Shown here: one piece after another, positions 4,895-47,868 of the stretch
Layout of the letters: each line of letters begins with the position of its first letter
Position numbering within the stretch: position 1 is the stretch's first letter
IMG/VR virus record: IMGVR_UViG_3300023174_002543
Coordinates: 186,001 to 250,000 of that record
DNA length: 64,000 nucleotides
Strand: one strand, 5' to 3'
Notes under the pieces: model-generated
What the model was told of the DNA's origin: nothing
The model's database searches: none
What the model saw: the letters and a program-made list of their open reading frames with translations, nothing else
Made by a program: the position numbers and the translations under genes

Positions 4895-5445
4895 AGACTC
4901 TTGCCCCAACGTGTATTGATGACATTCCAGTTTATGATCTTCCATTGTTCACGCAAATACTTCTTTTTATCGGCTCCGTAGTCAAGTGTCCAGGCATGTT
5001 CCCACCAATCAATTAATAACAATATATCATTACGAACTTCATGGTTTTTGATTGTTTTGAGTTTGCCATCACTTGCTAGATAAATCCAACCACTACCCTG
5101 TATAGTCATAGCCTCAGTCTCAATACTATCTTTGAGACCGTCGTAACTTCCATAATGCTTGTTTATAAATCCAAGCATAGGGCCGTTGGGCTTGTTATTG
5201 TTGCGTACCTCACGGAACTGAGGGAACAGAGTATTGTGTAGGAAAGCACCTGCGTAGTTAAATTCTTTATCACCTTCACCCTTGTTATATCTATCAGCAT
5301 ATCCATGTGCTAGTTTACCAAAGTGCAAGTCTAAGGCACCGGCACTGAATACAGGCTTTACATCCTTATATTCAAAATTTAACGGAATGATTTCTATATC
5401 TTGAGGCTTGTTTTTATCCTCAAGAAGGCTGATTATATCTCGCAT
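4891..5445 (-). CDS. sod: Fe/Mn superoxide dismutase
   Basis: LHFGK..HGY, FLHN, QGSGW and DWWEHAW motifs; the H/H/D/H metal ligands are present. Confidence 0.9.
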   Translation of the reverse strand: MRDIISLLEDKNKPQDIEIIPLNFEYKDVKPVFSAGALDLHFGKLAHGYADRYNKGEGDKEFNYAGAFLHNTLFPQFREVRNNNKPNGPMLGFINKHYGSYDGLKDSIETEAMTIQGSGWIYLASDGKLKTIKNHEVRNDILLLIDWWEHAWTLDYGADKKKYLREQWKIINWNVINTRWGKSL

Positions 5446-5471
5446 ACTTATATTTATCGTATGCGAGATAT
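5435..5471 (-). promoter_or_regulatory. 13-bp inverted repeat covering the sod start codon, with a late-promoter-like motif in the loop
   Basis: Minus strand reads ATATCTCGCATAC-GATAAATATAA-GTATGCGAGATAT. Confidence 0.75.
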
Positions 5472-5476
5472 GTTTA

Positions 5477-7816
5477 TCAGAAGCGTACTGCTAATTGAAT
5501 TTGTGCTATATCAGCAACGACTCCATTTTGTCTTTGTTGACCTATTTTTAGTATCATAGTAGAGTTGTTTTGTGCGTTATACATCAATGTTCCGTAAGCA
5601 GTAGATAGATTTTTATTGTTTTGTGCTACTTCCCCGGATACTGCCCAATTTTGATTAAATTGGTGTTCATAGCGCATTCCATACTCTGTAGTATCAACTG
5701 TTTGCTTTAGGTTAGTATAGTCAACTGCTGTTAGTGAAGAACCAGTTTCCATAACATAGTCACGTGAATTATGTTCTTTTCTAGCACCAACGAAAGGTCT
5801 GAATCCCTTCATAGCAGGGGTATATACACGCAAATGCGCCCAGGTATCCTGACCATGTGTATTAGCATTGTTACTCATACTTAATTCAGGTAATGTATGG
5901 AATGTATTATAAGTATTTTTGGATTGTCCTACATCAGTTTTAAATATCCAATCATTATGTACATATAGGTTATAGATAGTAAGTGCTTCTTTGTATAAAC
6001 TACCGCCACTGTTAGTGCCATCTAATACAGTGCTTATTCGGTTGTATTGTAAACCTAACAATGAAGAACGACTAATTCTATGCTCTGCACCAAATGTATC
6101 TATTGTTGCAGTATAACTATACCCATCTGATAAGTTAGACTTTGTTTTTGAACCATGTATATAAATGTTAATATCACGGTCATCAAAACTACGGTTAGAG
6201 ATTCTATCGTCTTTAACTAAGTTTCTACTTAATGGATCACTTAATAAACTATAGTTGATTCTAGTATTGGTTTCAGATAGTTTATCCATTTGGTCAATGC
6301 GTGTAGTATAGTTTTGATCCGTTGAGGTAATCTGAACATCATCTACAATAGTTGTAGTTGTTGTCACATCATTTCTTGTAGTAACTACGGTTACAGGAGT
6401 ATCTGTTGTAGTAGTTGTTGTACCATCACTCCAAGTAGTAACTGAAGTAGGAGTTGTAACGGTAGTTATAGTTACCGGTGTTGTATTAGTAACCACAGTA
6501 GTTACAGGTGTTGTACTAGTTAGTGTGGTAGTACGAATGATATTGAGTTCTCTTACACCACGCTCACCTCTAGTATTAGCATATGTAGTAACATCAACGG
6601 TTGAACCCCTTGTTATATTACTTGTTGTTACTGTTGTACCTGGTGTTTCTGTTACTACAACCGATGATGTGCCCGGTGTAGTACTGACTACTGTAGGTGC
6701 AGGTGTAGACATACTGCTTACAGAGCCTGCGGTTCCTGGATTAGCAATAGAACCAACTAATGTACTTGTGCTGGTTGATGTGTTATTACTATCATAGTAA
6801 TAGGTAACTTCACCTATCTGTACGCTATCACATGCTAATGTACCTAATGCTGATTGACAACCTGATATTGAACCATACGTATCAATAGCCTTAATGCTAG
6901 GGAATGTTATAAAGTAATAAACATATGGATTATTATTATTAATAGTAATCATACTTGTTTGAGTATAACGACCGCTGACATTTTCTAATGTTGTACTTTG
7001 ATTTGCAGTAATCTCAGTCCAAGTACGACCATCATTACTACCATACAAGGTAAACTTAGTAGGATCTCTTGGTACAAAGTCGTTAGCAGTAGTAAATTTA
7101 ATACCATTGATGACTTTACCTGCATTCAATGTAATTGTAAATCCTGCATTAGCACGGTCAAAGTTTAAATATTTCGTACCACTACTTCCGTCAACTGCCT
7201 TAGTTGCACCTTCACCACTTGGACTATTACTACTTGTAGGAGTAACAGTACTGATAATGCTACTTGTAACTGCTGTATAGTTTACAGTAGGTGCAACAGT
7301 TTGTCCTGCGGCTAATGGAGTAGTTGAACCACCTACACTCAATGCATTAACTTGTGATAATGTTGGATTGCGTGTTCCAGTCCATGACAACCCACTAGTG
7401 TTAGCAAAACCTTGTGTCATACTAAACAACTGACCGGTGTTGTTATCATTGCCCACAAAGAAGAAATAGTCTGTGCCCATATTAATAATATGCCCAGTGC
7501 CCATTACTGCTTTTTGAACGCCTGCTGAATTATATTGAATAGCATTGTATGGATTTGTGCTGTTACCTGTAGCTACAAATTTAATATAGTCTCCGGAAGA
7601 CCAACTTAGTTGACCACTTGTCCATGGAATCTTATATGCTGTTCCAGGATTTTTACTATAGATTTGACAAGTGGTCGTATTCATACAAGCATTAACATTC
7701 CACTGACTATCTGCTATCTGTGCTTGACCAAATTGTAAATCTGTAAAATCTGCACTTGCATTTACGCTCATGGCGGTAAGCAGAGCCATAATGGCTCCCT
7801 TTAAAAATCTTATCAT
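5477..7816 (-). CDS. Autotransporter-like outer-membrane protein: signal peptide, F5/8 type C (discoidin)-like domain, Thr-rich stalk, C-terminal beta-barrel
   Basis: Signal peptide ending ASA. Discoidin pattern AVDGSSGTK...RDPTKFTLYGSNDGRTW. Alternating beta-strand C-terminus ending in Phe (QLAVRF). Confidence 0.7.
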   Translation of the reverse strand: MIRFLKGAIMALLTAMSVNASADFTDLQFGQAQIADSQWNVNACMNTTTCQIYSKNPGTAYKIPWTSGQLSWSSGDYIKFVATGNSTNPYNAIQYNSAGVQKAVMGTGHIINMGTDYFFFVGNDNNTGQLFSMTQGFANTSGLSWTGTRNPTLSQVNALSVGGSTTPLAAGQTVAPTVNYTAVTSSIISTVTPTSSNSPSGEGATKAVDGSSGTKYLNFDRANAGFTITLNAGKVINGIKFTTANDFVPRDPTKFTLYGSNDGRTWTEITANQSTTLENVSGRYTQTSMITINNNNPYVYYFITFPSIKAIDTYGSISGCQSALGTLACDSVQIGEVTYYYDSNNTSTSTSTLVGSIANPGTAGSVSSMSTPAPTVVSTTPGTSSVVVTETPGTTVTTSNITRGSTVDVTTYANTRGERGVRELNIIRTTTLTSTTPVTTVVTNTTPVTITTVTTPTSVTTWSDGTTTTTTDTPVTVVTTRNDVTTTTTIVDDVQITSTDQNYTTRIDQMDKLSETNTRINYSLLSDPLSRNLVKDDRISNRSFDDRDINIYIHGSKTKSNLSDGYSYTATIDTFGAEHRISRSSLLGLQYNRISTVLDGTNSGGSLYKEALTIYNLYVHNDWIFKTDVGQSKNTYNTFHTLPELSMSNNANTHGQDTWAHLRVYTPAMKGFRPFVGARKEHNSRDYVMETGSSLTAVDYTNLKQTVDTTEYGMRYEHQFNQNWAVSGEVAQNNKNLSTAYGTLMYNAQNNSTMILKIGQQRQNGVVADIAQIQLAVRF

Positions 7817-8798: not shown

Positions 8799-8834
8799 GA
8801 TAATCCTTTTTAATTATCACGTATTTATCTCTTT

Positions 8835-9050
8835 TTAACGTCTACGGGTAATTCTGCCCTTAGATAAATCATAGGGGCTAAACTCTACCTCTACAGTATC
8901 GCCTAATAATATCTTAATATCGTGCTTACGCATTCTACCACTAATATAGCCCATTATGATATTACTACCGGGCATCTCTATCCTAAACATAGCGTTGGGT
9001 AATACTTCTACTACCTTCCCGTCTAGTTTAATACCTTCTTCTTTTGCCAT
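8835..9050 (-). CDS. infA: Translation initiation factor IF-1
   Basis: 71 aa; G.VVE.LPNAMF, ISGRMRK..I.IL.GD.V.VE.SPYDL.KGRI. Confidence 0.96.
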
Positions 9051-10103: not shown

Positions 10104-10126
10104 TTGTGTATTATAGTACTTTTTTC

Positions 10127-10681
10127 TTAGATAGTCAAATCTCTTTTACCCACATATGGATTATAGATTTTTTCTAATTGTTGTATAGTGTGACCAGTAC
10201 TTTCATCACTATGTTTAACTGCAATGCCACCTGCACTAGCCCAAGCACTCAAGTACTTTCCGAAGTCATCTACTAATACTTGTGGTTTACCGTTTTTAGT
10301 AGCATATTTATATTTTGCACTTGTAAAGATAGCATTACTGCTAGTACCCGGATTGTAAGTGTCTAACCATTCACGCTTACCTTTGATGCTTGCTTGCCCC
10401 TCCATTCTAAGAGGAGCACTTAATACAGTAAAAGGTATTTTGTTTCTATGTAACCAAGCAATGATTACCTGTCCACCAGGTAATGGATCTAAGTCTCTAA
10501 AAAAATGATATACATTTTCGGGACCTGATTTTGCCAATCTAACGATTGCTTCCTCAGGGTTTGTGATATCTTTATAATGTTTAACTTTTTCTATCTCAGC
10601 CCAACGACCAAAGAAGTCGGCTTGAACTCCATCCATATCAAGGTATAAATGGGGCATTGATTCGATTTCTTGGATTTTCAT
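10127..10681 (-). CDS. HAD-family 5'(3')-deoxyribonucleotidase
   Basis: LYLDMDGVQADF, LSAP, K..WL and LVDD motifs. Confidence 0.85.
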   Translation of the reverse strand: MKIQEIESMPHLYLDMDGVQADFFGRWAEIEKVKHYKDITNPEEAIVRLAKSGPENVYHFFRDLDPLPGGQVIIAWLHRNKIPFTVLSAPLRMEGQASIKGKREWLDTYNPGTSSNAIFTSAKYKYATKNGKPQVLVDDFGKYLSAWASAGGIAVKHSDESTGHTIQQLEKIYNPYVGKRDLTI

Positions 10682-10785
10682 ATTAATAGTATACTATATT
10701 GTATTTAGTATGTCAATATTTATTTGACCAAAATCAAATAAATACTAATAAGAAGTATTATAACTAAAGTATAAGGAGTCAATCT

Positions 10786-18326: not shown

Positions 18327-19922
18327 TTATCTTTTTTTGACCACTGATTGCTTGCTGCGACCCACATTACCGCCTGCTTTAACCTGTTGTGATAGTTTGG
18401 TAACTTTATCGGGTTCGGCTATACTTTGTGAAATTTCGGGTTCGTCAATATCTACATCTGGCGTAGTGTCAACATCAATATATGGACCGTCTGGGCCCAT
18501 ATCTTCATAGTCACTTGCGTTACGACCTAACTTGAAACTAAACCCAGCACTACTTGGTTCTACTGCACTAGATTTGTTTTCCATAGTTACAACGCCTTCA
18601 AGTTTTGAGGGCCATTGTGTAGCAAATGTTATCTCACCATTAGAATTGTAATCGGTGTATTGTTGAATAAAGTTCATTTCTAAAACTTGTAGAATAGTAT
18701 CTGCAAATTCTGGAACAACTGCTTTACTGTTAACTAACTGTGCAATGGTTTTCTTAATCTTATAAACCATTTTACCACCGTCACTAGCCTTCTCACTGTT
18801 AACATCATTTATTAAAGGTTGATATACTTGCGGTAATTGTAATGATTGTATACCCTTTTCATTCTTTTGACCCTTGATACTATTAATACTTGCAATACAT
18901 TGTTGTTGTAGTTTAGGAGCCTTGCTTTCAAATGGTAAAAATTTATGCCAAACTTTTGGTACACCGTTTGGACTAACTGAATATAAGAAATCCATAATCT
19001 TAAATGCCTGTACAATAGTACTTGGACCAGTCTCATCTTTACCTGCCTGACATAATTCAATTAATCTAACTGCATTCTTTAATTTTGCATTACGTTTGAT
19101 ATCTGGACTTATCTTCAACCCTGATATTGCAGGAGCTGCTCCACCACCGGTACCTTTACTACTGATATTCAAACTATGGCTTGTATTTGGATTTTTAATA
19201 ACTGCATAACTATCAGCAATGTTATTGTTAGCCGCACTAGGGAAGTTCAATGTTAACTCACCGATATCACCACCTAGCCACTCTAAGAACTGTTGCTTTC
19301 TTGGGAAGCGACTACGACCATATAATAATGCCAGTACACCCAAGTATTCACCTGCATAATCAACAATTGCTTTGCGTTCTGATTCTTTTGCTTTTTCTAA
19401 ATATTCAGGTGGTAATTGACAATATTCACCTGCAATAATATATTGTGCTAGTTGAATAACTACTCTACCATAGTCTGTACTTTGAAGTACTTGATTGCCT
19501 GCAATTTGTTCGTATAAATCCGTAGCAGGAATATCTCTGTCTGTAATCTTAATTAAACTTGGTTTCAGTAATACGGATTCTTTTGTACTACCGCCAAATT
19601 CTTCATTCTTGGCCAATTGTGACATCGGAATTTCTTGTCCGTCTTTAGTTAAGATAGTTGTTTTCTCACCCTTGAACGTACCGTCCTTCTTCATTTTAGT
19701 TAGACGCTTTGCCTCATTTGGATCAATAAAGATTTGGTCACCTGTTACATTGTCAATGAAGGGTTGATTTGTGGATATCTTTTGAATCAATAACGTCCAA
19801 CGTGCAGGGTCTTTGTTTATTTGGGTGGGGGTTAAGCCGTTAGCAAAAAGAGTTTGAGGAGCATTAGGATCCTTCTTTGTTGCTTCTTCTAAATTTTCTA
19901 GTATTGTTAATAAATCACGCAT
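18327..19922 (-). CDS. Large late protein with an MRDLL..LE leader and a possible PD-(D/E)xK nuclease-like core
   Basis: AGEY.G...FP...N..ADSY...NISSKG pattern; TAAATA 6 nt before the ATG. Confidence 0.55.
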   Translation of the reverse strand: MRDLLTILENLEEATKKDPNAPQTLFANGLTPTQINKDPARWTLLIQKISTNQPFIDNVTGDQIFIDPNEAKRLTKMKKDGTFKGEKTTILTKDGQEIPMSQLAKNEEFGGSTKESVLLKPSLIKITDRDIPATDLYEQIAGNQVLQSTDYGRVVIQLAQYIIAGEYCQLPPEYLEKAKESERKAIVDYAGEYLGVLALLYGRSRFPRKQQFLEWLGGDIGELTLNFPSAANNNIADSYAVIKNPNTSHSLNISSKGTGGGAAPAISGLKISPDIKRNAKLKNAVRLIELCQAGKDETGPSTIVQAFKIMDFLYSVSPNGVPKVWHKFLPFESKAPKLQQQCIASINSIKGQKNEKGIQSLQLPQVYQPLINDVNSEKASDGGKMVYKIKKTIAQLVNSKAVVPEFADTILQVLEMNFIQQYTDYNSNGEITFATQWPSKLEGVVTMENKSSAVEPSSAGFSFKLGRNASDYEDMGPDGPYIDVDTTPDVDIDEPEISQSIAEPDKVTKLSQQVKAGGNVGRSKQSVVKKR

Positions 19923-19931
19923 AATATGTAT

Positions 19932-20423
19932 TTAGCACTTGAACAAATCTTGGTGTTTAAACCAACGTTTTTGTCCATGACTAGTTTTTAGCGCAATACC
20001 GTGTTTAGCTAATTTGTCACGGAATACAAAGAAACTAGGACCGTGACTTAGAATGAAATCTTTACCTTTTCTATAACGCTTGGGTCCATCTATATCCCAT
20101 TGATATTGATGACACATTTCATGTGCTAGTGTAGTTACCATCCACTGCGGGCAGAACCATTTATCCATCATTTTTATAGTACAGTAACTCCCTGTATAGT
20201 TTATTGAAGTTTCTGCTATACACATGCCCCAGTATTTCTTACAATGACTAGCTAAAACTAACTTTGGCATATGTAGTTTATTGTCAAAAATTAACCAATT
20301 CAGTTGTTCATATACATGTCTAATATCACTTTTTGAGGGTCTATAGGGTAATTTTCTCTGTAAATAAACAGGGGGAAGAGGAAAATCCATTATTTCTTCT
20401 AAGGAGTAGTTAATGAGTTTCAT
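19932..20423 (-). CDS. SprT-like zinc metalloprotease
   Basis: TLAHEMCH and HG..F motifs. Confidence 0.8.
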   Translation of the reverse strand: MKLINYSLEEIMDFPLPPVYLQRKLPYRPSKSDIRHVYEQLNWLIFDNKLHMPKLVLASHCKKYWGMCIAETSINYTGSYCTIKMMDKWFCPQWMVTTLAHEMCHQYQWDIDGPKRYRKGKDFILSHGPSFFVFRDKLAKHGIALKTSHGQKRWFKHQDLFKC

Positions 20424-20492
20424 ACATATATTTATGAAAAATATACTACTTTAGTGCAAACCAACTAAATAATAGTACAAGGAGAATTTATC

Positions 20493-24446: not shown

Positions 24447-24665
24447 TTAATATTGTTTAGGGGGAAGTGTTTGGTCACGCAAATACTTTTTCCAACGACT
24501 CTTTGCTTTACTCTTATCTATCTTACGCTTAGTAGTGGGTTTTACAAATTCTTGTCTATCACGGATTTCTTGGATTAATCCTGACTCTAAGATTTTTTTT
24601 TTGAATTTACGTAATGCTTTTTCAACATTTCCGTCTGGTCCTACTATTACTTTTCTTCCTGGCAT
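24447..24665 (-). CDS. rpsU: Ribosomal protein bS21
   Basis: VEKALRKFKKK...G...E.R.RQ.FVKPT..RK. Confidence 0.9.
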   Translation of the reverse strand: MPGRKVIVGPDGNVEKALRKFKKKILESGLIQEIRDRQEFVKPTTKRKIDKSKAKSRWKKYLRDQTLPPKQY

Positions 24666-25855
24666 ATGATTGGTGTTGGTTTAATAATCTGCTCCCTACT
24701 TATATTTATCTTTTTAACATTAAACTTACGATATTCACGTGTCCGATACATATGGCACATTAATGCTTTTTCAATTTCAGTGTGCAAGCCCCTAGCACCG
24801 GTCTTTAGTGCTAGTGTATTTTCTGCTAATTGATCCAATGCATCTTCTGTAAAGGTCAAATCAATTTCATCTAATTTAAGCAAATATTGATATTGACTGA
24901 TATAGTTGTTTTTCACATCTGTAAGAATATGTATTAATTGTTCTTTAGTGAGGTTTTTTACACTAATAGTGGTTGTAAAACGACCTACAAATTCCGGAAT
25001 TAATCCAAACTTAGTCAAGTCATCAGGGGTGACTTCTGACAAATCACCTTCTATTTTACTATCTTTAATGTCTGCGGCAAATCCAATACTAGTACCATTG
25101 GTGCGTTTTGCTATAATTTCTTTTAATCCTACAAATGCACCACCTGCAATGAATAATATATTTTTAGTATCAATCTCAACCATGTCTGAACCAGGGTGTT
25201 TACGTCCACCTTGATTAGGTACACGACAAACTGTACCCTCAACTAACTTAAGCAATGCTTGCTGTACGCCCTCACCTGACACATCACGGGTAATGCTAGT
25301 ACTTTCACTTTTACGGGCAATTTTGTCAATTTCATCAATGAATACGATACCCTTTTCAGCTAAAGATTTGTCTCCTCCAGCCGCGTTAAGCAACATACTA
25401 ATCATTGATTCAACATCATCACCTACATATCCGGCTTCGGTTAAACTAGTAGCATCGGCAACAACAAACGGAACCTTTAAATACTTGGCGGCAGTTTTAG
25501 CCAATAGTGTTTTACCACTACCAGTTGGACCAACTAACAATACATTGCCTTTTTGAATTTCTAAGTCTTTGGGAGGACGACTAATACGCTTATAATGATT
25601 AGTGATTGCGACACTTAACACTATTTTAGCACTATCTTGACCCACAATATGTTGGTCCAAATATTCTTTAATACTTTCAGGATCATATTGGGGTTCTTCT
25701 TGTGGACCTGAGGTTTCATCAACTATTAATTCTTGGCAAAGTTCAACACAATCGCTACAGATTGCTACACTTTCACCTACGATTAATTTTTTGACTGTTT
25801 CTTTACTAGTACCACAAAAACTACAATGAGTGAGTTGTTTATTTTCTTCTGTCAT
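24647..25855 (-). CDS. clpX: ClpX ATPase
   Basis: CSFC/CSDC zinc domain, [29 protein letters not shown] loop, GARGL. Confidence 0.97.
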
Positions 25856-25891
25856 TATAATACTTATCTAAGTACAAATACTTGATAGAAT

Positions 25892-27549: not shown

Positions 27550-29349
27550 TTAGATGGTATTTTTGTCTTCTTTTATGTATTGGGCAATTGCGTCTTGTTC
27601 AGCAGGAGTCAAATGATCCGGATCATATTCTCCGCTAGCAATTTTCTCAATTAAATGTTGGATATAACCATCTTCAGATAGATGACTATCAGTATTTTCA
27701 CGGTTTACTTCTATCCATTTTCTACCGTTAAATTTAAAAATTCTATGCGGAATAACATCAATACGGGTAAACATATCACCTAAAGCTGGTACTTTGGGAA
27801 AATTATCACCGAATGTAACGTTTGGTTCAGTAGGATCATCAACTTTTAATTTTAAATCATTGACAAGATGTAAGTCGGGGCGCAAATCAGAGAGAACACT
27901 TTTATGCATTCTTTTCCCACCGTATACTATGTAATCGCCGGGACTGTCTTTTAGTAGATTACTTAACTCAATGTCTTCTTCTTTTGGAGCTTCAAAAGCA
28001 GGTCCTGTTTGTACCCATTCGCCTGTTGTTAAATCTTTAAAGCCTTCAAAGTTAGGTGTATCATCCTTTTTAACTTCTGGTTCCTCTATTTGCTCACGTA
28101 TAGTCATAGTGTGTTGCTTTAAGAAACCTACAGATACTGAATCATCCTCTTTAGTTGTAATAACTGGGTCTGTATAATCTGGTTCGTGATCCTCTTCTAC
28201 AAACTTGTATTCAATATCAATTGCAGGTGTTTTAGACGTAACAGGTTCTTCTACCTTTTCTTCAACTACAGGAATGTTGTCAGCAGGATTTGAGTTAGTG
28301 ACTACCAGTTGAATAGGTTCAGAACCATCAAAGGGCCCATCTAATACATCACACTCTTTATTTGGACAGAATAATCCAATGCCAGGTGCCTTAACAAGAG
28401 GAGTATTGCAAATATGGCAATTAATTGGATCATCTAATTCTTTAACTACATCTTCATCTATCGGAAATAATTCGTCTTTGTTAGTAAGTTCACCTGTTGG
28501 TAAATCTTCTTTGGCACGTTCACGTAATGCCGCTAGTGCTTCCTCATTAATTGGACCGTCATCTTGTTCGTATTTGTGTTTGTCTTCTTTTTCTTCTTTA
28601 AGCCAACCAAATGTCATTTGAGCCGCTAATAGCATAACAATTGCTAACGGGTCAAACACAATAACAATAAGAATAATAACCCAAGTTACTGCACGTTCTA
28701 ACACATTAGTATCAGGGTTGTCACCATAGACAAATGCCGCTATGTACTTGATTGGCCCTACTTCTGCTTCAACCTTACGAACCTCGGCTGCGATGGGTGC
28801 CCTTTCTTCGCTAAGGGCGGCAACAGTTTTCTGTTCGGTCGCAATCTCAGATTGAAGGCGGACACGTTCTTTTTGCTGTGCTCTTCGGATTTGAACAGCT
28901 TTCTCGGCACCTTTTTCATCATTGCTTCGACCCATAACTTGGTCCACAGCCTCATCCATTTGTTTAAGCGCCTTCCGGTTCGCATCTATGTTGTCCTTTG
29001 CTGTTTTGATTTTTTCGTCATATACTGCAATCTTACTTTGTACATCACCACTTACTAATGTTTGGTCACTATGTGCTTTGCTTAAAAAACCAAAAATACC
29101 TAAACTAGTAATAACCATTAAAATAACAACGGCAATAATAGCATATGACTTCATTAAAAATGGAGCTTGTGTCCATCGTGCTTTTACCCAACTTGCAATA
29201 ACAAGTTTACCTACCTCAAGACTGATACCCATAACCATGATAGGTATTGCCGCGGCAGAGAATATCGCAACCAAACCTGCGACAGAATAATAAATGGCAA
29301 CCGCTGAAATAGTTAAGCCGGAAAGTAGGAGTAATATAGCTAGGATCAT
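27550..29349 (-). CDS. Membrane protein with four TMs, a coiled coil and an acidic C-terminal region containing a zinc ribbon
   Basis: S..A.YYS..GL, GIFGFLSKAH, EVGPIKY and FDPLA motifs typical of large myoviruses; CHIC...C...C. Confidence 0.75.
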   Translation of the reverse strand: MILAILLLLSGLTISAVAIYYSVAGLVAIFSAAAIPIMVMGISLEVGKLVIASWVKARWTQAPFLMKSYAIIAVVILMVITSLGIFGFLSKAHSDQTLVSGDVQSKIAVYDEKIKTAKDNIDANRKALKQMDEAVDQVMGRSNDEKGAEKAVQIRRAQQKERVRLQSEIATEQKTVAALSEERAPIAAEVRKVEAEVGPIKYIAAFVYGDNPDTNVLERAVTWVIILIVIVFDPLAIVMLLAAQMTFGWLKEEKEDKHKYEQDDGPINEEALAALRERAKEDLPTGELTNKDELFPIDEDVVKELDDPINCHICNTPLVKAPGIGLFCPNKECDVLDGPFDGSEPIQLVVTNSNPADNIPVVEEKVEEPVTSKTPAIDIEYKFVEEDHEPDYTDPVITTKEDDSVSVGFLKQHTMTIREQIEEPEVKKDDTPNFEGFKDLTTGEWVQTGPAFEAPKEEDIELSNLLKDSPGDYIVYGGKRMHKSVLSDLRPDLHLVNDLKLKVDDPTEPNVTFGDNFPKVPALGDMFTRIDVIPHRIFKFNGRKWIEVNRENTDSHLSEDGYIQHLIEKIASGEYDPDHLTPAEQDAIAQYIKEDKNTI

Positions 29350-29360
29350 AGTGTATATAT

Positions 29361-29558
29361 TTAGTCTTTAAATAAATGTCCGAATGTATTGTTAAACTCG
29401 TCTAGTTGCATAACTAGTTTTCTAGGTAAACTAGCATTCATTGAAATAAAATAATGAACCCATAATCCATCTTCTCTTTCTTTAAGTTGGATTATCTCAA
29501 TCATTGCCCCGTCTTCAAACGAAAACTTCTTACCTATTAAATCTAAATAATCATCCAT
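29361..29558 (-). CDS. Small hypothetical protein
   Basis: Co-oriented ORF. Confidence 0.5.
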   Translation of the reverse strand: MDDYLDLIGKKFSFEDGAMIEIIQLKEREDGLWVHYFISMNASLPRKLVMQLDEFNNTFGHLFKD

Positions 29559-36245: not shown

Positions 36246-38752
36246 CTCCTTTAATTAACTGATTAAGACTCTATTATATACCCAAAGTGATTTATTGTCA
36301 ACCTTTTTCGACCACGGTCAAATCGTTGACCCACTCTAGTTCCATCAATGCATCTTCCTCATTATCAAACCCTACCGCATCATGTCCTGATGCATAGTGT
36401 TTAATGTAGAATTTTCCGTTGCCCGGGCTTGCCTCAGTATCGATACCAACTTCACCGACACCTTCAACTATTCTAACAATGAAATCCATGTTATACTCCT
36501 ACTCTATACGTATTATAATTACGGATTTTGCTTTGGCGATTAGTATGGCTTTCGTTGAAACGGATTTCATAGCCACGTTCACGCAGGGCAGTAATCAATA
36601 CTGACAAATCACAATCCTCTTCCAAGAAAGCATTCTCACCTTTTTGATAACTATAAGTAGAGATTTTATCAGCGATACCAAGTTTCACCAATTTGGACTT
36701 AGCAATACGTGCCCAAGCATGACCTGGATCTGCAAAAACTTTGATAGAGATTTTTTTAGTCATTTGTACTCCTTAGACCAAATCAACTTGTACTTGTTTG
36801 CCACGGAAAGTGTCACCGAGACCTGTTGGAATCGTTTCGTTTTTGCGTTTGGCTTCATAACGCAAATAAGACAATTTAATCATTGCGTCCCAGCAAAGTG
36901 AGCGGGCGTTAACTGTAGCAAATTGCTCGGTCATTTGCTGGATTGTCATATAAAAACCAACGTCATTTTCACTACCGTCACCCTTGAAAATGATACGGAA
37001 TTTTTGTGAATTTTTGAAACCGTCAATGATAGTTTTTGTACGCATTTTGTAGTCCTTTTCTTTACTGTCTAAGATTCTATTATATACCCAAATCCATTTA
37101 TTGTCAAGCCATTTTGTATGATTTTATGAATTCAGGACCAACATCTAGACTAACAAAAGTATCACCTTGCATACCTTGCTCAGAATAAGAAACATCAGTA
37201 CCTAATTCTAGTCTAGAAAGTAATACTTTTACATTACTTAAAAATTCTTTATCCGTATAGATGAGGCCGTAAACATTCACATTCCAAGTATCAGGGCTAA
37301 AGTGTACCCTTAGTTCACCAAACTCCCAATCATCAGATGTATACGAAAGTTCTAATCCGGTAACTAGTACTGTTTTAGCCAGGTTAGACCAATAACCAGA
37401 ACCATCTGTACTCAACTTTGTATTAACTTTAATCATTAATTGCTCCAAAAAGATTCGCTAGAGGGTGAACAGAAATACGGGGTATCATACCGTTCCTTGT
37501 ATGTCTTACCAGTCATTAAATTTTGCTTAATTTCATAAGTTTGGAACATCTCAACAATGAAGCCCAACTTGCGTTTTGATTCAGCAACAGCCTCGATATA
37601 GTCTTTAGTAGAAGGGGCAAAATCTTCTTTTTTAATAAGACGTTTACCTTCTTTGACACGTTTGTCAGATTTGTAAATTTCAAGTGTGTAGCAAAGCATT
37701 TGTGACATTTGTGTTCCTTTAATCAATCAATACAAGTATTATATACCCAAATCCATTTATTGTCAACCTCAGGCCGCTTTTCTAAAGTAATTATAGGGCA
37801 ATCCCTGAGTAAAGCAAAAGTATTCATAATCACCGTTAGCACCCTCAGCATCCATCAACCAAGCAATCACACGTTCACGATTGGTACCAGTGTGCATGAG
37901 GTTAGTAATAGTATCCTCAAACTTAGCAATAGCCGCTGCCTCAGCAATTTTACGTTGGGCATCCTCTTGTTCAATAGCAGTAGCCAATGAAGCAAACTCT
38001 GCTTCAAATACCTCAAGGGTCCAACCAGAAGTGTCAACACCGCGAGGGCGAACGCCATAAGCATCCTTGTACATATCCCAATATGTGCATTGGGCTTGTT
38101 CCAACTCAGACATTTCTTCCCAAGATTTGAATTCGTTTGACATTTTGTACTCCTTTAATCAACTAACTAAGACTCTATTATATACCCAAATCCATTTATT
38201 GTCAAGTTTTGGATTTCTCAGCACCGACGATTTCCCAATGATTTCCGTCACATTTGACAAAAATCTTACGACCGAAAACTGTCACAAAACCATACTCACC
38301 GTCTTGGTAGACGTTGACCGGATCAGGGATAATGGTCACCGTGCGGGGTGTCTCACAGTAATCCCAACGCCTAGTAGGAAGTTTGTTTTTGAAATACATG
38401 TAATTCTGACTACCTGTAACAAAAAGTTTTACCTTCATAACTAGCTCCTTTAATCAATCAATACAAGTATTATATACCCAAACCGATTTATTGTCAAATT
38501 TTGGGTTGTTGTTATTCTGCAACAGGAGCAAACATTTTTGCGCCCTCAACCATAAATATCCTATACGCTTGCATGGTCTTTTCGCTATAGACCATTCGAC
38601 CGTCTTTTTGAATGTCAGCTAAAAGTTCTAATAGACCTAGACCCAAAAATTCTTGTTCTTTTTTAAGTTGGGCTATTGCAGTTTCAATTTTCATAACAAC
38701 TCCTTTAATCAATCAATACATGTATTATATGCCCAAAATGATTTATTGTCAA
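36246..38752 (-). repeat. Six dispersed ~55-bp direct repeats, each a consensus sigma70 promoter plus RBS
   Basis: Copies at about 36246-36301, 37053-37107, 37715-37766, 38150-38205, 38445-38497 and 38700-38752. Consensus TTGACAATAAAT..(T)TTTGGG(T/C)ATATAATA...AAAGGA, with a 17-nt spacer in all. Confidence 0.92.
36298..38694 (-). CDS. Eight small early ORFs between the repeats (36298-36489, 36491-36763, 36773-37045, 37104-37436, 37436-37708, 37769-38143, 38202-38438, 38512-38694)
   Basis: Each follows a repeat RBS or is coupled to the previous ORF; 36491-36763 has DPGHAW...LEEDCD. Confidence 0.7.
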
Positions 38753-38784: not shown

Positions 38785-38797
38785 GAAACTAAAAGTA

Positions 38798-40416: not shown

Positions 40417-41743
40417 TATCGTACCTTTACTGATTTAAGATATTCTGATATGTTACCATACAGACTAACCAACATAGCAATCTTACTGTCATATAATCTT
40501 ATGAAAGGTTTCTTGCTATCTTCTACTTTATTTACGCCTATGTAGTAGGGACATTTTAATTTTTTATTTAACTCTAATAGATAATTATGCCAGCCGCCAC
40601 CAGACTTGGTATCTATTGTAAAATCGTAATTATAAAATTCTATTTTGGCATACCTGAATGATAAATCACCGATATCAGATAATCGTAGTCCGCCATCTGG
40701 TCTTTGAACCATCCACCATTTTTTCATGGCTTCTTCTTGTGTCCAAGTAGGACCGTCTATATCTAATTCTTTGATAATTTGTTGTGTGACTAATTCTTTA
40801 TAAGATAGTTTAGTCATCTGGATAAACTCTAGTGCCGGTAGATAGAAACACGACACTAAATTTATCTGTTTTGAATTGGTTGTTTAATTTGCGACAGAGA
40901 TTTCTGGCGTGCCCTGGATTACTAAAACTAGTCTTCTTATATTTGGGCACAGTATTGCTATCTAAGTAATGTGAACTTTTTAAATTGATAGGTTGGTCAT
41001 CATAGAAGACTGCCCATATTCCACTGGCTTCTACGATTTGGTCACATTTATAACTTGTTTTATCTACTATCTCTAATAGAACTTTTGGTTGTGTTCTACT
41101 CATTACCAACGCTCCCCTCTCATAACTACTTGTATGTTATCATCTACTGTATGTCCACGCTGGTCTAACATGATTTTCATAATATCGTCACGTAATTGTT
41201 TAGCTTCATTTAACGGTAATACAACTTGTACCGCGTTGCGGGTTTCTGCTAACGCAACTTTGTCAATAAACTTTTTTACATTTATCATCAAGTATTTATG
41301 CTACTATTTAACTCATCCTCGGTATTAAATGGCCCGAGATACTCATATCTACATACAAAAATGTACTTTGGACAAAAAATATTGACAAATTCTGTATTTT
41401 GTTTGACTGCAAACCAGCCGGCTGCATGATAGCATTTGCTTTTTGGTTCTTTAGTAAACAAATGTAGTTTGCGTTTTACATCAAATACACTATTATAAAC
41501 TTTACTTTTTCCTGTAGGAAAATTAGAAAATGTAACTGCTACTGTATCTTGTGGTTTACGAAATTTTTCAAATTCAATCTTTTTGAATTTTTCAATTTGT
41601 TTAGTACTGTTATAATGTTCAATATTGTTTCCAATCTTTACATCAAATCCTGTACCTTGACTCTCTACGTTTCCTATTTTTTTATCACCGTCCGTGATAA
41701 CCCAATATTGATTTTTGATAATTGGTTTTGCTACTAAGTTCAT
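40416..41743 (-). CDS. Four conserved hypothetical proteins (40416-40817, 40810-41103, 41103-41288, 41288-41743)
   Basis: Coupled ORFs; motifs GLRL...CPYY, KYKKTSFSNPGHA and CPK...Y.GPF. Confidence 0.65.
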
Positions 41744-43534: not shown

Positions 43535-44526
43535 AGTACCCCCTTGTATGGATTGTTTAACCACTTGCTATATGTCTCGGCATTCTGTGATATCTTCTCA
43601 AGTTCGTACTTACCACAGAATTTCATCAAGTGAATGCCTACTTGAGGTGTAGTTTCAAGCCTAACACCAGTTTTAATAGCATTGTCAACATTAGTCTTTA
43701 CCCAATCAGGCTGACATGTCAAGTCAATCAATTGACGATTGCGCTCATAGTCGTCCTTAACACGATGCTCGACACCATCATGGTCAACCCAGCGTTGCAG
43801 CATCATGTTATTCCAATTAAAACCTTGCTTAGTACGATCCTCGTATGCTTCCATCAAGCCGATTTTGTTCTTAGTACCTTTCTCACGCACACCTGGATAT
43901 GCCGAAAACACATTGTCGCTTGAATCACCGCGCATACATTTTTTGAAAAGCAACCATTGAGGATCTTCTAAGAGTTTGGGCTCTTTAGTTTTCTTATCAA
44001 CGATTAGTTTTCCTTTATCATCAAAATATCCATCTGGGGTGATAAGTTGGTTAGTGATTCCATTGTACTGATGTACTGTATCTGATATAAGCTGGATATA
44101 ATCGCCATCAGAACTAATAATAAAAATTTTATCATTTGGGTGTAAGTGTATAAATCTTGCAATTAAATCGTCAGCCTCTGCTTGCGGTTCACGCAATACG
44201 CTAACGTTCGTTTTCTCTTTTAGAAATGTAGTGAACTTTTCATAAGTATCCCAAAACATTTCCGATTCTTCTTTTTCTGCCTCAGTCAATGCCTGATTAG
44301 CAACTGCTCGTTGTGCCTTGTAGGGCTTGTATAGGTCTTTGCGAAACGACCTACCTTCTAAGCAAAACACAACGTGGTCAATGCCAAATTTGCGTACAAT
44401 CTGATTGACACTCGCAAGTGTCAAGTGTAGTGCCATTCCCACTTTCTCCCACGGGTCACTATTACGTGATGCAACGTGACGGGCACGGAAGAAAGTGTTG
44501 GCAGTGTCGATAAGTGCGTAGTTCAT
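43522..44526 (-). CDS. rnh: T4 RNase H-like 5'-3' exonuclease (FEN family)
   Basis: LID..N, YKA.R, EADD, SSDGDY.QL, GD.SDNV and N..LIDL motifs. Confidence 0.9.
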   Translation of the reverse strand: MNYALIDTANTFFRARHVASRNSDPWEKVGMALHLTLASVNQIVRKFGIDHVVFCLEGRSFRKDLYKPYKAQRAVANQALTEAEKEESEMFWDTYEKFTTFLKEKTNVSVLREPQAEADDLIARFIHLHPNDKIFIISSDGDYIQLISDTVHQYNGITNQLITPDGYFDDKGKLIVDKKTKEPKLLEDPQWLLFKKCMRGDSSDNVFSAYPGVREKGTKNKIGLMEAYEDRTKQGFNWNNMMLQRWVDHDGVEHRVKDDYERNRQLIDLTCQPDWVKTNVDNAIKTGVRLETTPQVGIHLMKFCGKYELEKISQNAETYSKWLNNPYKGVLCQV

Positions 44527-44562
44527 GTGTGTATTATATACGTATATTTAGATTTTGTCAAG

Positions 44563-45412: not shown

Positions 45413-46330
45413 TTATGTCAATTCAAAAAGAGTACTAAAGAGTGCGTTTTGTTGGGCAAGTTTTTCCGCTTTTCTCTCAGCGGCCCGGCGTCTGTGCCCT
45501 TCAGCAATTTTTTGCTTCGTTTCCTCGCTTCTAGGTTTACCCTTAAGTGCTTCACTGATTTTTTTATTAGCAATGGGGTCAAAGGGTTTTGGTTTTTTCT
45601 TCAAGCCTTTCATTGCTGCACTAACTGCGGCTCGATGTTCCGGTGATAATGGACCTCTAGGTTTCTGCTTCTTACCTCTCAAAGCATCACCAATTTTTTT
45701 CTTAGTTTCTTCGGAATGAACTGCGGGAGGTCTTTGTTTATTATTCTCTAGTCTAGTTTTAACTCGTTTATCTATAACTTCCTGTGGTATAGTTGACCCT
45801 AAATTTCTTTCCCGCAGTCGTTGAATTGCGAGTGCAGACGGTTTTCTTCCCATTTGTCTCTTGCTAATATTTTTGCAAAATTCTTCAGTACGAATTTTAC
45901 CTTTATTTCCCTCACCAATTTTTTTTCTAGTTTCAAGAGATACTGGTTTACCTTTTCTGCCTATAATACCCAATCTGTTTAGTTCACTTAATCTTTCCCT
46001 AGTCTCCGGTGACGGATTACTCATTCCCTCACCACCATCTGTTCGATTTAACAAAACACCGGTTTTAAGGTCTTTTCGCCCCCACCATCTAATCATTCTT
46101 CGTTCTAATGCAAATGCACCTAATTCAGTTAGATTATCTTCTAATATAACTATTCGAGATAATTCTTTGGGTTTAGAACCATTGGTATGTTTGTTATCAA
46201 CTGCACGATTTCCCTTACCTTTTCCTATGTAGTAGGGGGTTCCGGCGGTTGCTGTTATTGAGGTGTAGGCACGAATATACGCATAAATATAAAATCCTTT
46301 AGGAGGATTGTTTTTATCGTATATACGCAT
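45413..46330 (-). mobile_element. Free-standing GIY-YIG homing endonuclease with NUMOD3 repeats
   Basis: YIYAY...YYIGKG, E...I, N...GGEG, and repeated H/RS.ET(K/R).KI motifs. Confidence 0.85.
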
Positions 46331-46752
46331 TAACTTACTTCTGTGCGTCCATCACCTAAATCACGTGTTCTAATGGGGCGGACATCCCTATTTGTAGGAT
46401 CTGCTACTACTTGTTCATAGACCTCAAGTGCTATATTGCGACAAACTACTTGAAACCAACGATCGGCTATAACATCATCAGTGTCAGTATCTTTTTGTTT
46501 GTATCCCGCTTTTATCAAATTGATAATAAACTTATCATTCCAGTCAAGTTCAAATGCACCGTTGTGCATATCATTGGGATCAATATCTACTTTAGTAATT
46601 GCAATATAGGGTTCACCTGCTAATGTTGCTTTTTCTTTGTCTGATAACTCAAGTGCAACCTTAGGTTCTTTTGGCTTGCGTGGTTTCTTTGGTTTAGGCT
46701 CAACCTTTACAGGCTCTGGCTTTTTAAAAATACTTTTAATCTTATCAAACAT
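46330..46752 (-). CDS. Conserved hypothetical protein
   Basis: EP.I...G.FELDWN..F..L...GY...WF..VC motif. Confidence 0.65.
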
Positions 46753-46758
46753 AGTATA

Positions 46759-47868
46759 CTATTTACTGAAAACGTAAATGCCTTCAAATTTTTCTCTACC
46801 TTCATTACGAAAGTTACCAACACCTGGTCTAGTGTTTAATATCATTTTGATTGTCTTACGATATTTGAATCCTAAACTTTCAGCAGTACTTATCCATTTA
46901 TCAACTACAAAGAACTCGCCACCTATACCCTTGTAGTCAGCAATGTTAGTAGCAAACAATCCATCAACATTCAACCCATTATATATATTACGCATAGTTG
47001 GGACTACATAACCATCAAACCATTCATCCAATGTAGTATAACGATTCATACATTGTGTTGGTTCGTCACAATACTTTTCTAAGTTAAAGTAAGGCGGACT
47101 ACTGAATGCTAAGTCAATATTTTCTGGTTGATAGTCTTCACTAACAGTATTGTATAACTCCACATCATTGTCACAAAACTTTTGTAGATAGTTAAGATAT
47201 TTAAATGTTTCTGTATTTGGGTCTATACCTATATAGGTATAGTGCATATTACTAAGACTAGTGCCTAGCATTCGTCCACCGTATCCTGAACTATAATCAT
47301 ATATACGACCGAACATAGTAGGGCATAGATGTTCAATGATACTACGTGCGTTTAATGATTTAAAGTTTTGTATGTTCTCACCGGTTACTAACTCTAATGC
47401 AGTTCTAATTAATGTAGGATAAACTAATCTTGCGCCACCACTACGATGTTCAAAGCAAATACGAATGGCTCTATCTAGTTTAGTATCGTTTAAGAACCTA
47501 TCACGCAAACTATTACCTGCACGACCTTTTGGTAATGCAGTTAACATATTAGGGAATAAGAAACGATTGATTGTCTGTCCACCATTGTTACCTAAAGGTA
47601 GTATATCGTTATGTATCTCGTTATACTTTCTATCTTTTAGTGTGTTAATTTCATCTATTAATCCCTGTTCGGTGTAGTAATACATTGGAACAAGATTAAT
47701 ACTACGATATAGTTCTAGTATTTGTTTACGTACACCTTCTGGATCTTTAGCATAAACTTCTTCTGTAAACTTATCAAACTCAGGGTATAGGCTTTCATAA
47801 CCAGTAAACTTGTCACCGTGTATATGTTCAGGCTTTACACCCCAAATTTGATATAGTTCATCTATCAC
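46759..47868 (-). CDS. DNA amino-methyltransferase (N4-mC/N6-mA type)
   Basis: SAM motif YDYSSGYGGR, GIDPN, catalytic FSSPPYF. Confidence 0.82.
   Translation of the reverse strand: MIDELYQIWGVKPEHIHGDKFTGYESLYPEFDKFTEEVYAKDPEGVRKQILELYRSINLVPMYYYTEQGLIDEINTLKDRKYNEIHNDILPLGNNGGQTINRFLFPNMLTALPKGRAGNSLRDRFLNDTKLDRAIRICFEHRSGGARLVYPTLIRTALELVTGENIQNFKSLNARSIIEHLCPTMFGRIYDYSSGYGGRMLGTSLSNMHYTYIGIDPNTETFKYLNYLQKFCDNDVELYNTVSEDYQPENIDLAFSSPPYFNLEKYCDEPTQCMNRYTTLDEWFDGYVVPTMRNIYNGLNVDGLFATNIADYKGIGGEFFVVDKWISTAESLGFKYRKTIKMILNTRPGVGNFRNEGREKFEGIYVFSK

What the first reader, a model, noticed from the sequence alone, without database searches (positions are those of the whole stretch)
5443..46765. 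Systematic leaderless-mRNA design for both early and late genes
SEEN: three sigma70 promoters with 17-nt spacers end exactly 6 nt before an ATG that has no SD. They precede the AbrB-like gene (10110-10138), the nucleotidase (10688-10716) and rnh (44533-44561). In addition, TAA(A/G)TA lies 4-8 nt before SD-less ATGs at 5445, 19922, 20423, 25855 (clpX), 29349, 41288 and 46752. KNOWN: transcription starts about 6-7 nt after the -10 box, and leaderless mRNAs initiate on 70S ribosomes and respond to initiation-factor levels. INFERENCE: the phage runs a leaderless class alongside strong-SD genes, and its own IF-1 and bS21 may tune the balance between them.
Basis: partly seen in the sequence, partly recalled or inferred. 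Interest (0 to 1): 0.7.

Follow-up and report, generated by a model that had tools for sequence, protein, structure and literature searches.

The report
Leaderless genes in a jumbo phage
An uncultivated 367-kb freshwater phage places two kinds of promoter so close to about one gene in eight that the messenger RNA should begin at the ATG itself, and its relatives keep this layout gene by gene, so it looks like a deliberate second way of starting protein synthesis.

Summary
All ten sites exist on the minus strand at the stated coordinates.

Genome-wide (367,104 bp), TAAATA is followed by an ATG opening an ORF of at least 50 aa at offsets 4 or 5 in 35 cases. The background is about 1 per offset. 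Near-consensus sigma70 promoters show a spike at exactly 6 nt.

These genes lack a Shine-Dalgarno (SD) site, use ATG almost exclusively, and carry a pyrimidine at -1 (78% against 42% for SD-led genes). The remaining promoters have 15-45-nt leaders with strong SD sites.

The phage encodes a T4 gp55-like late sigma factor. In T4 the late motif TATAAATA lies at -13 to -6, which predicts the observed 5-nt gap.

The layout is conserved:
- terL: 62 of 68 distinct relatives.
- clpX: 46 of 61.
- rnh: 22 of 52.
- The whole pattern recurs in three other complete genomes.
- It is absent from PA5oct, Atu_ph07 and Vibrio phage 2.275.O.

No transcription start mapping was possible, so "leaderless" remains an inference (confidence about 0.8). 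The translation-factor idea is only partly supported. IF-1 co-occurs with the trait (5 of 5 against 0 of 3), whereas bS21 is present in all eight genomes.

The parts
10110..10138 (-). Early sigma70-type promoter (TTGACT-17-TATAAT) ending 6 nt before the ATG at 10103 of the MazE/AbrB-like gene (9912-10103)
   Evidence: Pfam MazE_antitoxin 1.1e-7. The 6-nt spacing is kept in relative L184. Orthologues in G003 and G004 use GATAAGTA 4-5 nt from the ATG instead.
10688..10716 (-). Early sigma70-type promoter (TTGACA-17-TATACT) ending 6 nt before the ATG at 10681 of the 5'-nucleotidase gene (10127-10681)
   Evidence: Pfam NT5C 1.8e-8 aligned from residue 12. L184 keeps TATAAT + 6 nt. G003 and G004 have TATAAT + 6 nt; G002 has GATAAATA + 5 nt.
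44533..44561 (-). Early sigma70-type promoter (TTGACA-17-TATAAT) ending 6 nt before the ATG at 44526 of the rnh / 5'-3' exonuclease gene (43522-44526)
   Evidence: The Pfam 5_3_exonuc_N match starts at residue 4, so the ATG is the true start. The same geometry occurs in 22 of 52 distinct relatives and in G002, G003 and G004.
5443..5456 (-). Late motif GATAAATA (TAAATA 5451-5456) + 5 nt + ATG 5445 of an Fe/Mn superoxide dismutase gene (4891-5445)
   Evidence: conserved in G002 (gap 7) and G003 (gap 5).
19920..19934 (-). Late motif CTAAATA (19929-19934) + 6 nt + ATG 19922 of a 531-aa protein. The TAA of the motif is also the stop codon of the upstream gene.
   Evidence: gap 6 conserved in G002 and G004.
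20421..20434 (-). Late motif CATAAATA (20429-20434) + 5 nt + ATG 20423 of a SprT-like protein gene (19932-20423)
   Evidence: gap 4-5 conserved in G002, G003 and G004.
25853..25866 (-). Variant motif GATAAGTA (25861-25866) + 5 nt + ATG 25855 of clpX (24647-25855)
   Evidence: In 46 of 61 distinct relatives TAA[AG]TA (mostly GATAAGTA) ends 4-8 nt before the ATG.
29347..29363 (-). Late motif CTAAATA (29358-29363) + 8 nt + ATG 29349 of a 599-aa membrane or virion protein. The predicted 5' UTR is 2-3 nt.
   Evidence: G003 and G004 orthologues have CTAAATA + 4 nt.
41286..41298 (-). Late motif CATAAATA (41293-41298) + 4 nt + ATG 41288 of a 61-aa ORF (41103-41288)
   Evidence: gap 4 conserved in G002, G003 and G004.
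46750..46765 (-). TAAATA (46760-46765) + 7 nt + ATG 46752 of a 140-aa virion-structural-like protein. This is the weakest site.
   Evidence: The three complete relatives have an SD-like GAGAG/GAAAG leader here and no motif.
8835..9050 (-). Phage IF-1 gene, SD-led (GAGGAG), downstream of sigma70-type promoters
   Evidence: PF01176 3.8e-21; sequence context.
24447..24665 (-). Phage bS21 gene. TAAATA (24703-24708) lies 37 nt upstream, inside the 3' end of clpX. There is no well-placed SD.
   Evidence: PF01165 4.8e-14.
8799..8827 (-). Contrast example of the leadered late class: GATAAATA (TAAATA 8822-8827) + 23-nt leader with AAGGA + ATG 8798
   Evidence: Leadered and leaderless sites share the extended consensus.
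38144..38205 (-). Contrast example of the leadered early class: TTGACA-17-TATAAT + 33-nt leader with AAAGGAG + ATG 38143

Best explanation
The window lies in a 367-kb uncultivated freshwater jumbo phage with a T4-like core. The phage uses two promoter classes. The first is host sigma70-type early promoters (TTGACA-17-TATAAT). The second is late promoters of the T4 gp55 type, with consensus (G)ATAAATA and a minor GATAAGTA variant.

For a fixed subset of genes the promoter is placed so that the predicted transcription start is the A of the ATG, or 1-3 nt upstream of it. This subset comprises about 7-11 early genes and about 45 late genes, roughly 12% of all genes. In this window it comprises 3 early and 7 late genes. 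These mRNAs would have no 5' UTR and no Shine-Dalgarno site, and would be translated by the 5'-AUG / 70S route. All other promoters give 15-45-nt leaders with strong AAGGAG-type SD sites.

What is shown: the motifs, the spacing, the absence of SD, the near-exclusive ATG use, the -1 pyrimidine, the gp55 homologue and the conservation.

What is inferred: the start sites themselves and the mode of translation.

Likely consequences, also inferred:
- Only transcripts begun at the gene's own promoter are translatable, which gates protein synthesis in time and insulates it from read-through.
- Output is set lower than for SD-led genes; the major capsid gene is SD-led.
- A phage-supplied IF-1 could raise the efficiency of this channel.
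For: 1. Geometry. The T4 late motif occupies -13 to -6 (PMC1524935), which predicts 5 nt to +1. The observed gaps are 5 (21 genes) and 4 (14 genes). The sigma70 class peaks at exactly 6 nt. That is the same spacing as lambda PRM-cI, TAGATT-TAACGT-ATG.
2. The same promoter occurs in both classes. Leaderless and leadered TAAATA sites share A at -1 (69% and 75%, against 23% background) and G at -2.
3. A gp55-like late sigma factor is encoded (phrog_12791, 1.4e-68; phmmer against T4 gp55, 1.3e-6). The genes served include portal, terL, tail fibres and virion proteins.
4. There are no hidden starts. Most of these ATGs are the first start codon in their frame. Only 4 of 46 have a downstream SD plus start within 40 codons, against 24 of 161 in controls. 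Pfam matches begin at residues 4-18.
5. Transcription start signature. The base at -1 is a pyrimidine in 131 of 169 leaderless sites against 253 of 598 SD-led starts, P=3e-16.
6. Conservation. terL 62 of 68, clpX 46 of 61, rnh 22 of 52. Three further complete genomes show the same spikes. Orthologue class is retained: 16 of 24 late leaderless genes stay leaderless, and only 1 of 86 SD-led genes becomes leaderless. Promoter class can swap while the leaderless geometry stays.
7. It is not a stop-codon artefact. Only 5 of 46 motifs double as the upstream stop, and 25 of 46 lie more than 40 nt from the upstream gene.
Against: - No 5' end has been mapped. No RNA run holds this phage.
- Metatranscriptome contigs come only from relatives below 95% identity and show no end pile-ups.
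- The host is unknown, so neither the host RNA polymerase nor the ribosome's capacity for leaderless mRNA can be checked.
- The gp45 clamp was not found with Pfam profiles, and no gp33 homologue was looked for.
- Gaps of 4-8 nt mean that some transcripts would carry 1-3 nt before the AUG.
- Some clpX relatives have 18-26-nt leaders without an SD. The host may therefore translate SD-less leaders anyway, which weakens the need for strict leaderlessness.
- Site 46752 is not conserved.
Confidence: 0.8

Rival explanations
1. TAAATA next to the ATG is not a promoter there. It is an A/U-rich translation element, an SD-independent ribosome landing or standby site, on longer transcripts that start upstream.
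For: The motif is A/U-rich. Some clpX relatives have 18-26-nt SD-less leaders, and bS21 itself has no well-placed SD. SD-independent initiation therefore seems to work in this host.
Against: - The same extended motif also sits 15-29 nt upstream with an SD in between, which suits a promoter and not a fixed-distance ribosome element.
- The motif matches the T4 late promoter, and a gp55 homologue is encoded.
- An unrelated motif, the sigma70 -10 box, shows the equivalent spacing.
- The pyrimidine at -1 fits start-site choice.
- In many terL relatives a terminator hairpin lies directly upstream of the motif.
Confidence: 0.1
2. The pattern is an artefact of gene junctions. The TAA of TAAATA would be the stop codon of the upstream gene, and the short gap would reflect translational coupling.
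For: At 19922 the motif's TAA is the stop codon of the upstream gene. The genome is compact, with many short junctions.
Against: Only 5 of 46 motifs coincide with an upstream stop. 25 of 46 lie more than 40 nt from any same-strand upstream gene. The main gaps of 4 and 5 put the TAA out of frame with the downstream ORF. Control hexamers that contain TAA show no spike.
Confidence: 0.03
3. The start codons are mis-assigned. The true starts would be downstream ATG, GTG or TTG codons with SD sites, so the promoters would give normal short leaders.
For: One candidate (window 11745) has AGGAGG plus ATG 24 codons downstream. My simple gene caller over-extended several TTG starts.
Against: Only 4 of 46 have any downstream SD plus start, fewer than in SD-led controls. 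Domain matches and tblastn alignments reach residues 1-18. The ATG position is conserved in relatives.
Confidence: 0.04
4. The pattern is chance in an AT-rich genome.
For: GC content is 36.5%, and TAAATA occurs 398 times.
Against: Poisson P is 2e-11 to 6e-23 at offsets 4 and 5. Thirteen control hexamers are flat. The pattern replicates in three other genomes and is absent from three AT-rich outgroups.
Confidence: 0.01

Closest known systems
Thermus phages phiYS40 and P23-45: middle and late transcripts mostly leaderless
   Same: A lytic phage with a whole temporal class of leaderless mRNAs. The link to initiation-factor balance has been proposed for phiYS40 (IF2 up, IF3 down; PMC3594737 citing Sevostyanova 2007).
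   Different: - Those phages are unrelated, and their host phylum commonly uses leaderless genes itself (PMC12340547).
- Their promoters are host-sigma -10 types. Here the late class uses a T4 gp55-type motif.
- Here only about half of the late promoters are leaderless.
- Here the phage carries its own IF-1.
Lambda PRM-cI leaderless mRNA
   Same: The geometry is identical to the three early sites: -10 hexamer + 6 nt + ATG. The AbrB/MazE-like gene here is likewise a small DNA-binding regulator.
   Different: That is a single gene of a temperate phage. Here it is a genome-wide class in a lytic jumbo phage.
T4-type late transcription (gp55 sigma, TATAAATA at -13 to -6)
   Same: The motif core, the phage-encoded gp55 homologue, and the position upstream of structural genes.
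   Different: - The consensus here is (G/C)ATAAATA, with a GATAAGTA variant.
- gp45 was not identified, and no gp33 homologue was looked for.
- The cultured relatives PA5oct, Atu_ph07 and Vibrio 2.275.O place the motif 15-30 nt upstream with an SD. They show no offset 4-5 spike.
T4 late genes whose ribosome site is masked in early read-through transcripts (for example gene e; from my own knowledge)
   Same: The logic would be the same: only transcripts begun at the late promoter are translatable.
   Different: T4 achieves this with an RNA hairpin over an SD. Here it would be achieved by having no SD at all. This is inferred and not tested.

Membership tests
Leaderless mRNA genes | Transcription starts at, or within a few nt of, the start codon | not testable with these tools
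   No RNA run holds the phage. Contigs from relatives give no 5' ends. Only promoter geometry and the Y(-1)/A(+1) signature speak to it.
Leaderless mRNA genes | -10 element 6-7 nt upstream of the start codon, with no room for an SD | tested here: met
   Sigma70 class at 6-7 nt. Late motif at 4-5 nt, which equals the T4 distance to +1.
Leaderless mRNA genes | AUG start codon, since GUG and UUG work poorly without a leader | tested here: met
   All 7 early starts are ATG. Among called starts within 10 nt of TAAATA, 39 of 44 are ATG; 4 are GTG or TTG and one (41291) is a TTG overcall of the ATG at 41288.
T4-type gp55-dependent late promoters | -10-only motif resembling TATAAATA | tested here: met
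   (G)ATAAATA is enriched 10-fold upstream of genes.
T4-type gp55-dependent late promoters | Phage-encoded gp55-family sigma factor | tested here: met
   Genome 50127-51077: phrog_12791 1.4e-68, phrog_234 1.2e-21; phmmer against T4 gp55 1.3e-6.
T4-type gp55-dependent late promoters | gp45 sliding clamp and gp33 co-activator | tested here: inconclusive
   A gp44-like clamp loader was found. gp45 was not detected by phmmer, PF09116 or PF02916. The 229-aa neighbour is a BI-1-like membrane protein. gp33 was not searched.
T4-type gp55-dependent late promoters | Serves late or structural genes | tested here: met
   Portal, terL, tail fibre and virion structural proteins.
Sigma70-type early promoters | TTGACA and TATAAT hexamers 17 +/- 1 bp apart | tested here: met
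   About 48 such sites lie within 60 nt upstream of genes; the three in the finding have 0-1 mismatch.
phiYS40-like factor-assisted leaderless programme | Change in initiation-factor balance during infection | not testable with these tools
   Only gene content could be examined: IF-1 is present, and IF3 and S1 are absent.

The most novel reading that the evidence does not exclude
This freshwater jumbo-phage clade acquired IF-1 together with a switch of about one gene in eight to leaderless mRNAs. In this reading the phage IF-1, perhaps with the phage initiator-like tRNA, shifts host ribosomes toward 5'-AUG / 70S initiation. That would give the phage a private translation channel. The channel would time late proteins strictly by promoter firing and would stay open when SD-dependent initiation is impaired.
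Probability: 0.15. Interest if true: 0.85.

Novelty: new variant of a known kind. Interest (0 to 1): 0.62.

Why it matters
Leaderless mRNAs are usually seen as rare exceptions in phages such as lambda, or as a habit of certain host phyla. Here two different RNA polymerase holoenzymes, one with the host sigma70 and one with a phage gp55-type sigma, are both positioned to start at the ATG.

The choice between leaderless and SD-led is kept gene by gene across genomes that are about 75% identical in protein sequence. It survives even when the promoter class is exchanged. That points to selection on the leaderless state itself.

If mapping confirms it, the clade offers two things. One is a natural system for asking what leaderless translation is for: temporal gating, dosage, or resistance to ribosome-targeting conflict. 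The other is a testable role for the IF-1 genes found in huge phages.

It also matters for annotation. Gene callers that rely on an SD will mis-place these starts.

Tried and rejected
- RNA evidence. No run holding the window is on record as RNA. Metatranscriptomes found with the capsid gene hold only relatives below 95% identity, as short contigs. Laying them on the portal and terL regions gave no 5'-end pile-ups. This is uninformative and is not evidence against.
- Closest records. Megablast of 10 kb against phage records found nothing.
- Host identification through ClpX homologues failed, because all top hits are phage relatives. The host stays unknown.
- gp45 clamp. It was not found by phmmer or by two Pfam families. 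The 229-aa gene beside the clamp loader, guessed from T4 gene order, is a BI-1/YccA-like membrane protein.
- A(+4) enrichment, proposed as a leaderless signal, is weak: 62% against 48%, P=0.085.
- Initiator-like tRNA (C1xA72). It is present in the clade but also in PA5oct and Atu_ph07, so it does not mark the trait.
- bS21 as a marker of the trait is rejected, because it occurs in all eight genomes compared.
- The stop-codon/coupling, mis-annotation and chance explanations were tested and rejected.
- Two T4 hits of TAAATA + 5 nt + ATG lie inside the mobB and nrdG coordinate ranges, so they are chance.

Full report
**Context**

The window is bases 186,001-250,000 of a single 367,104-bp virus record, rated complete by CheckV, with 36.5% GC. 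DNA runs that hold it are lake and freshwater metagenomes.

Its large terminase is T4-like. The nearest cultured relatives are Pseudomonas phage PA5oct (50.6% identity), Sinorhizobium phage Phosso, Agrobacterium phage Atu_ph07 and Vibrio phage 2.275.O. Hundreds of uncultivated relatives at 70-94% protein identity exist in IMG/VR.

A simple codon-model gene caller gave 423 genes covering 95% of the genome, two thirds of them on the minus strand.

**Checking the observation**

- Three near-consensus promoters (TTGAC[T/A], 17-nt spacer, TATA[A/C]T) end exactly 6 nt before the ATGs at 10103, 10681 and 44526.
- The genes are a MazE/AbrB-like protein, an NT5C-type nucleotidase and a 5'-3' exonuclease (rnh).
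- TAAATA lies 4-8 nt before the ATGs at 5445 (superoxide dismutase), 19922, 20423 (SprT-like), 29349, 41288 and 46752.
- TAAGTA lies 5 nt before the ATG of clpX at 25855.

**Is it more than chance?**

- TAAATA is the most enriched non-SD hexamer in the 45 nt upstream of genes: 91 genes against 9 expected.
- The distance from the motif to the start codon is sharply bimodal. One peak is at 4-5 nt. A second is at 15-23 nt, where an SD lies in between.
- Independently of gene calls, 43 of 398 TAAATA copies have an ATG at offset 4 or 5. Of these, 35 open an ORF of at least 50 aa, against about one per neighbouring offset (Poisson P 2e-11 and 6e-23).
- Thirteen control hexamers of similar composition show nothing comparable.
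- For sigma70-like promoters, ATGs opening ORFs cluster at offset 6 (7 cases) and offset 7 (4 cases). There are none at offsets 0-2, 5 or 8, and the remaining promoters have 17-44-nt leaders with AAGGAG-type SD sites.
- In total about 46 late and 7-11 early genes fit the pattern.

**What the motifs are**

The phage encodes a homologue of the T4 late sigma factor gp55 (genome 50127-51077; phrog_12791 1.4e-68; phmmer against T4 gp55 1.3e-6). It also encodes a gp44-like clamp loader.

In T4 the late promoter TATAAATA occupies -13 to -6 relative to the start, and a CTAAATA variant is known from phage Aeh1 (PMC1524935). Five bases therefore separate the motif from +1. The commonest gap here is 5 (21 genes), followed by 4 (14 genes).

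Motifs next to an ATG and motifs followed by a leader share the same flanking preferences. A precedes the motif in 69% and 75% of cases, against 23% elsewhere, and G is enriched one base further upstream. They are therefore one promoter class.

The genes served include portal, large terminase, tail-fibre and virion proteins, along with auxiliary genes such as SOD and ClpX. The major capsid gene is SD-led inside an operon.

The early class has the same layout as the experimentally established leaderless lambda PRM-cI pair, TAGATT + 6 nt + ATG. I read that sequence from the lambda record. That TAGATT is the PRM -10 box comes from my own knowledge.

**Independent signatures**

1. These ATGs are nearly always the first start codon in their frame. 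Only 4 of 46 have a downstream in-frame start with an SD-like word within 40 codons, less than in SD-led controls (24 of 161). Pfam matches reach residues 4-18.
2. The base before the ATG is a pyrimidine, mostly T, in 131 of 169 candidate sites over four genomes. In SD-led starts, which prefer A, it is a pyrimidine in 253 of 598 (P=3e-16). This is the known preference of bacterial RNA polymerase for pyrimidine at -1 and purine at +1 (from my own knowledge). A purely translational element does not predict it.
3. Only 5 of 46 motifs double as the stop codon of the upstream gene, and 25 of 46 lie more than 40 nt from any same-strand upstream gene. Junction effects therefore do not explain the pattern.

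**Conservation**

| Gene | Distinct upstream regions | Result |
|---|---|---|
| terL | 68 | 62 have TAA[AG]TA ending 4-6 nt before the ATG; only 2 have an SD-like word |
| clpX | 61 | 46 keep the motif at 4-8 nt, nearly always as GATAAGTA |
| rnh | 52 | 22 have the sigma70 -10 box exactly 6 nt from the ATG; the others have 25-35-nt leaders |

For terL the sequence further upstream varies freely and often contains a terminator hairpin.

Three other complete genomes of the clade (349-360 kb) reproduce the whole-genome pattern. They show 31-37 ORFs at offsets 4-5 and a spike at offset 6 after sigma70 promoters.

Between this genome and G003, class is retained by orthologue. Of late-leaderless genes, 16 of 24 stay so. 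Of SD-led genes, 63 of 86 stay SD-led and only 1 of 86 becomes leaderless.

The AbrB-like and nucleotidase genes keep the leaderless geometry while the promoter type changes between genomes: sigma70 with -35, -10 only, GATAAATA or GATAAGTA. This suggests selection on the leaderless state itself.

**Outgroups**

PA5oct, Atu_ph07 (first 400 kb) and Vibrio phage 2.275.O show no spike at offsets 4-5 (0+5, 0+2 and 0+2 ORFs). They show only the 15-30-nt hump. The trait therefore belongs to the freshwater clade.

**Translation factors**

- IF-1 (8835-9050) is SD-led and lies downstream of sigma70-type promoters.
- bS21 (24447-24665) lies 37 nt downstream of a TAAATA inside the end of clpX and has no well-placed SD.
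- bS21 occurs in all five clade genomes and all three outgroups. IF-1 occurs in all five clade genomes and none of the outgroups.
- The genome has no IF3 or S1 domain.
- It has 33 tRNAs, one with the initiator-like C1xA72 mismatch. That tRNA also occurs in PA5oct and Atu_ph07.
- Published work says that IF1, IF2 and extra initiator tRNA stimulate leaderless translation, while IF3 inhibits it (PMC9031893).
- Published work also says that E. coli ribosomes lacking uS2 and bS21 favour the lambda cI leaderless mRNA (PMC10491246).

The IF-1 idea is therefore plausible and weakly supported by co-occurrence, which amounts to one evolutionary event. bS21 does not track the trait and, if it acts at all, should favour the SD-led class.

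**What is missing**

No 5' ends could be mapped, and the host is unknown. The gp45 clamp was not found. "Leaderless" is therefore an inference from sequence, which I hold at about 0.8.

**Comparison and novelty**

Whole leaderless temporal classes are known in Thermus phage phiYS40, where a shift in IF2 and IF3 was proposed (PMC3594737). Single leaderless genes are classic in lambda. Promoter -10 boxes adjacent to ORFs are common in Deinococcus-Thermus (PMC12340547).

A full-text search for papers holding both "leaderless" and "TATAAATA" returned nothing. The AR9 jumbo-phage study reports 5' UTRs of 26-491 nt.

I therefore rate this as a new variant of a known kind. T4-type late promoters and host-type early promoters are both fused to start codons. 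The arrangement covers about 12% of genes, is conserved gene by gene, and occurs in an uncultivated jumbo-phage clade that also carries IF-1.

Noticed in passing
window 9437-9499 (-): A perfect sigma70 promoter (-35 9494-9499, -10 9471-9476) is followed after 7 nt by an 8-codon mini-ORF (9437-9463). Its TGA overlaps the ATG of the next ORF, upstream of IF-1. Similar 1-19-codon ORFs follow perfect promoters at genome 154459, 163151, 163254 and 166884. This may be leaderless ribosome loading followed by re-initiation.
   Followed up: partly
window 44539-44555 and 10694-10710 (-): TAAATA sits inside the 17-nt spacer of the rnh and nucleotidase early promoters. In 17 of 52 rnh relatives it lies at a gap of 18 to the ATG. 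These may be dual early/late promoters.
   Followed up: partly
window 44536-44547: A perfect 12-bp palindrome, ATATACGTATAT, overlaps the rnh -10 box. It is kept in G002 but not in G003 or G004. It could be an operator.
   Followed up: partly
window 25861-25868 (-) and loci L185-L264: clpX keeps the G variant GATAAGTA, not GATAAATA, in most relatives. AbrB-like orthologues in G003 and G004 use it too. About five genes in this genome have it. It may be a separate (middle?) promoter subclass.
   Followed up: partly
window 24447-24720 (-): The bS21 gene overlaps the end of clpX by 19 nt. Its ATG has no SD within 20 nt; GGGAG lies 24 nt upstream, just after a TAAATA.
   Followed up: no
genome 155,200-170,100 (L008, L009): A cluster of 33 tRNA genes includes three tRNA-CAT. 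One of these has the C1xA72 initiator-like mismatch but lacks the three G-C pairs in the anticodon stem. It is also found in PA5oct and Atu_ph07.
   Followed up: yes
genome 113,949-138,410 (+), outside the window: A single open frame of about 8,150 codons, with an internal TAAATA + 5 nt + ATG at 125,589.
   Followed up: no
genome 278,821-279,510 (L012:8821-9510, -): A Bax-inhibitor-1/YccA-like membrane protein (PF01027, named "FtsH-binding" by JGI) sits beside the gp44-like clamp loader. It is widely conserved in the clade.
   Followed up: partly
G001 (IMGVR_UViG_3300027749_002876, 524,565 bp): This relative carries two copies each of IF-1 and bS21. It may be a concatemer or an assembly duplication.
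   Followed up: no
window 45413-46330 (-): A homing-endonuclease-like gene (phrog_314) lies between rnh and the virion-protein gene at 46752.
   Followed up: no
window 36200-38800 (-) and genome 174,400-183,500 (+): A family of near-identical early promoter-leader cassettes (TTGACAATAAATC...TTTGGGTATATAAT plus a 30-34-nt leader ending AAAGGAG) precedes many small ORFs. TTG triplets inside these leaders were mis-called as starts by my gene caller.
   Followed up: partly
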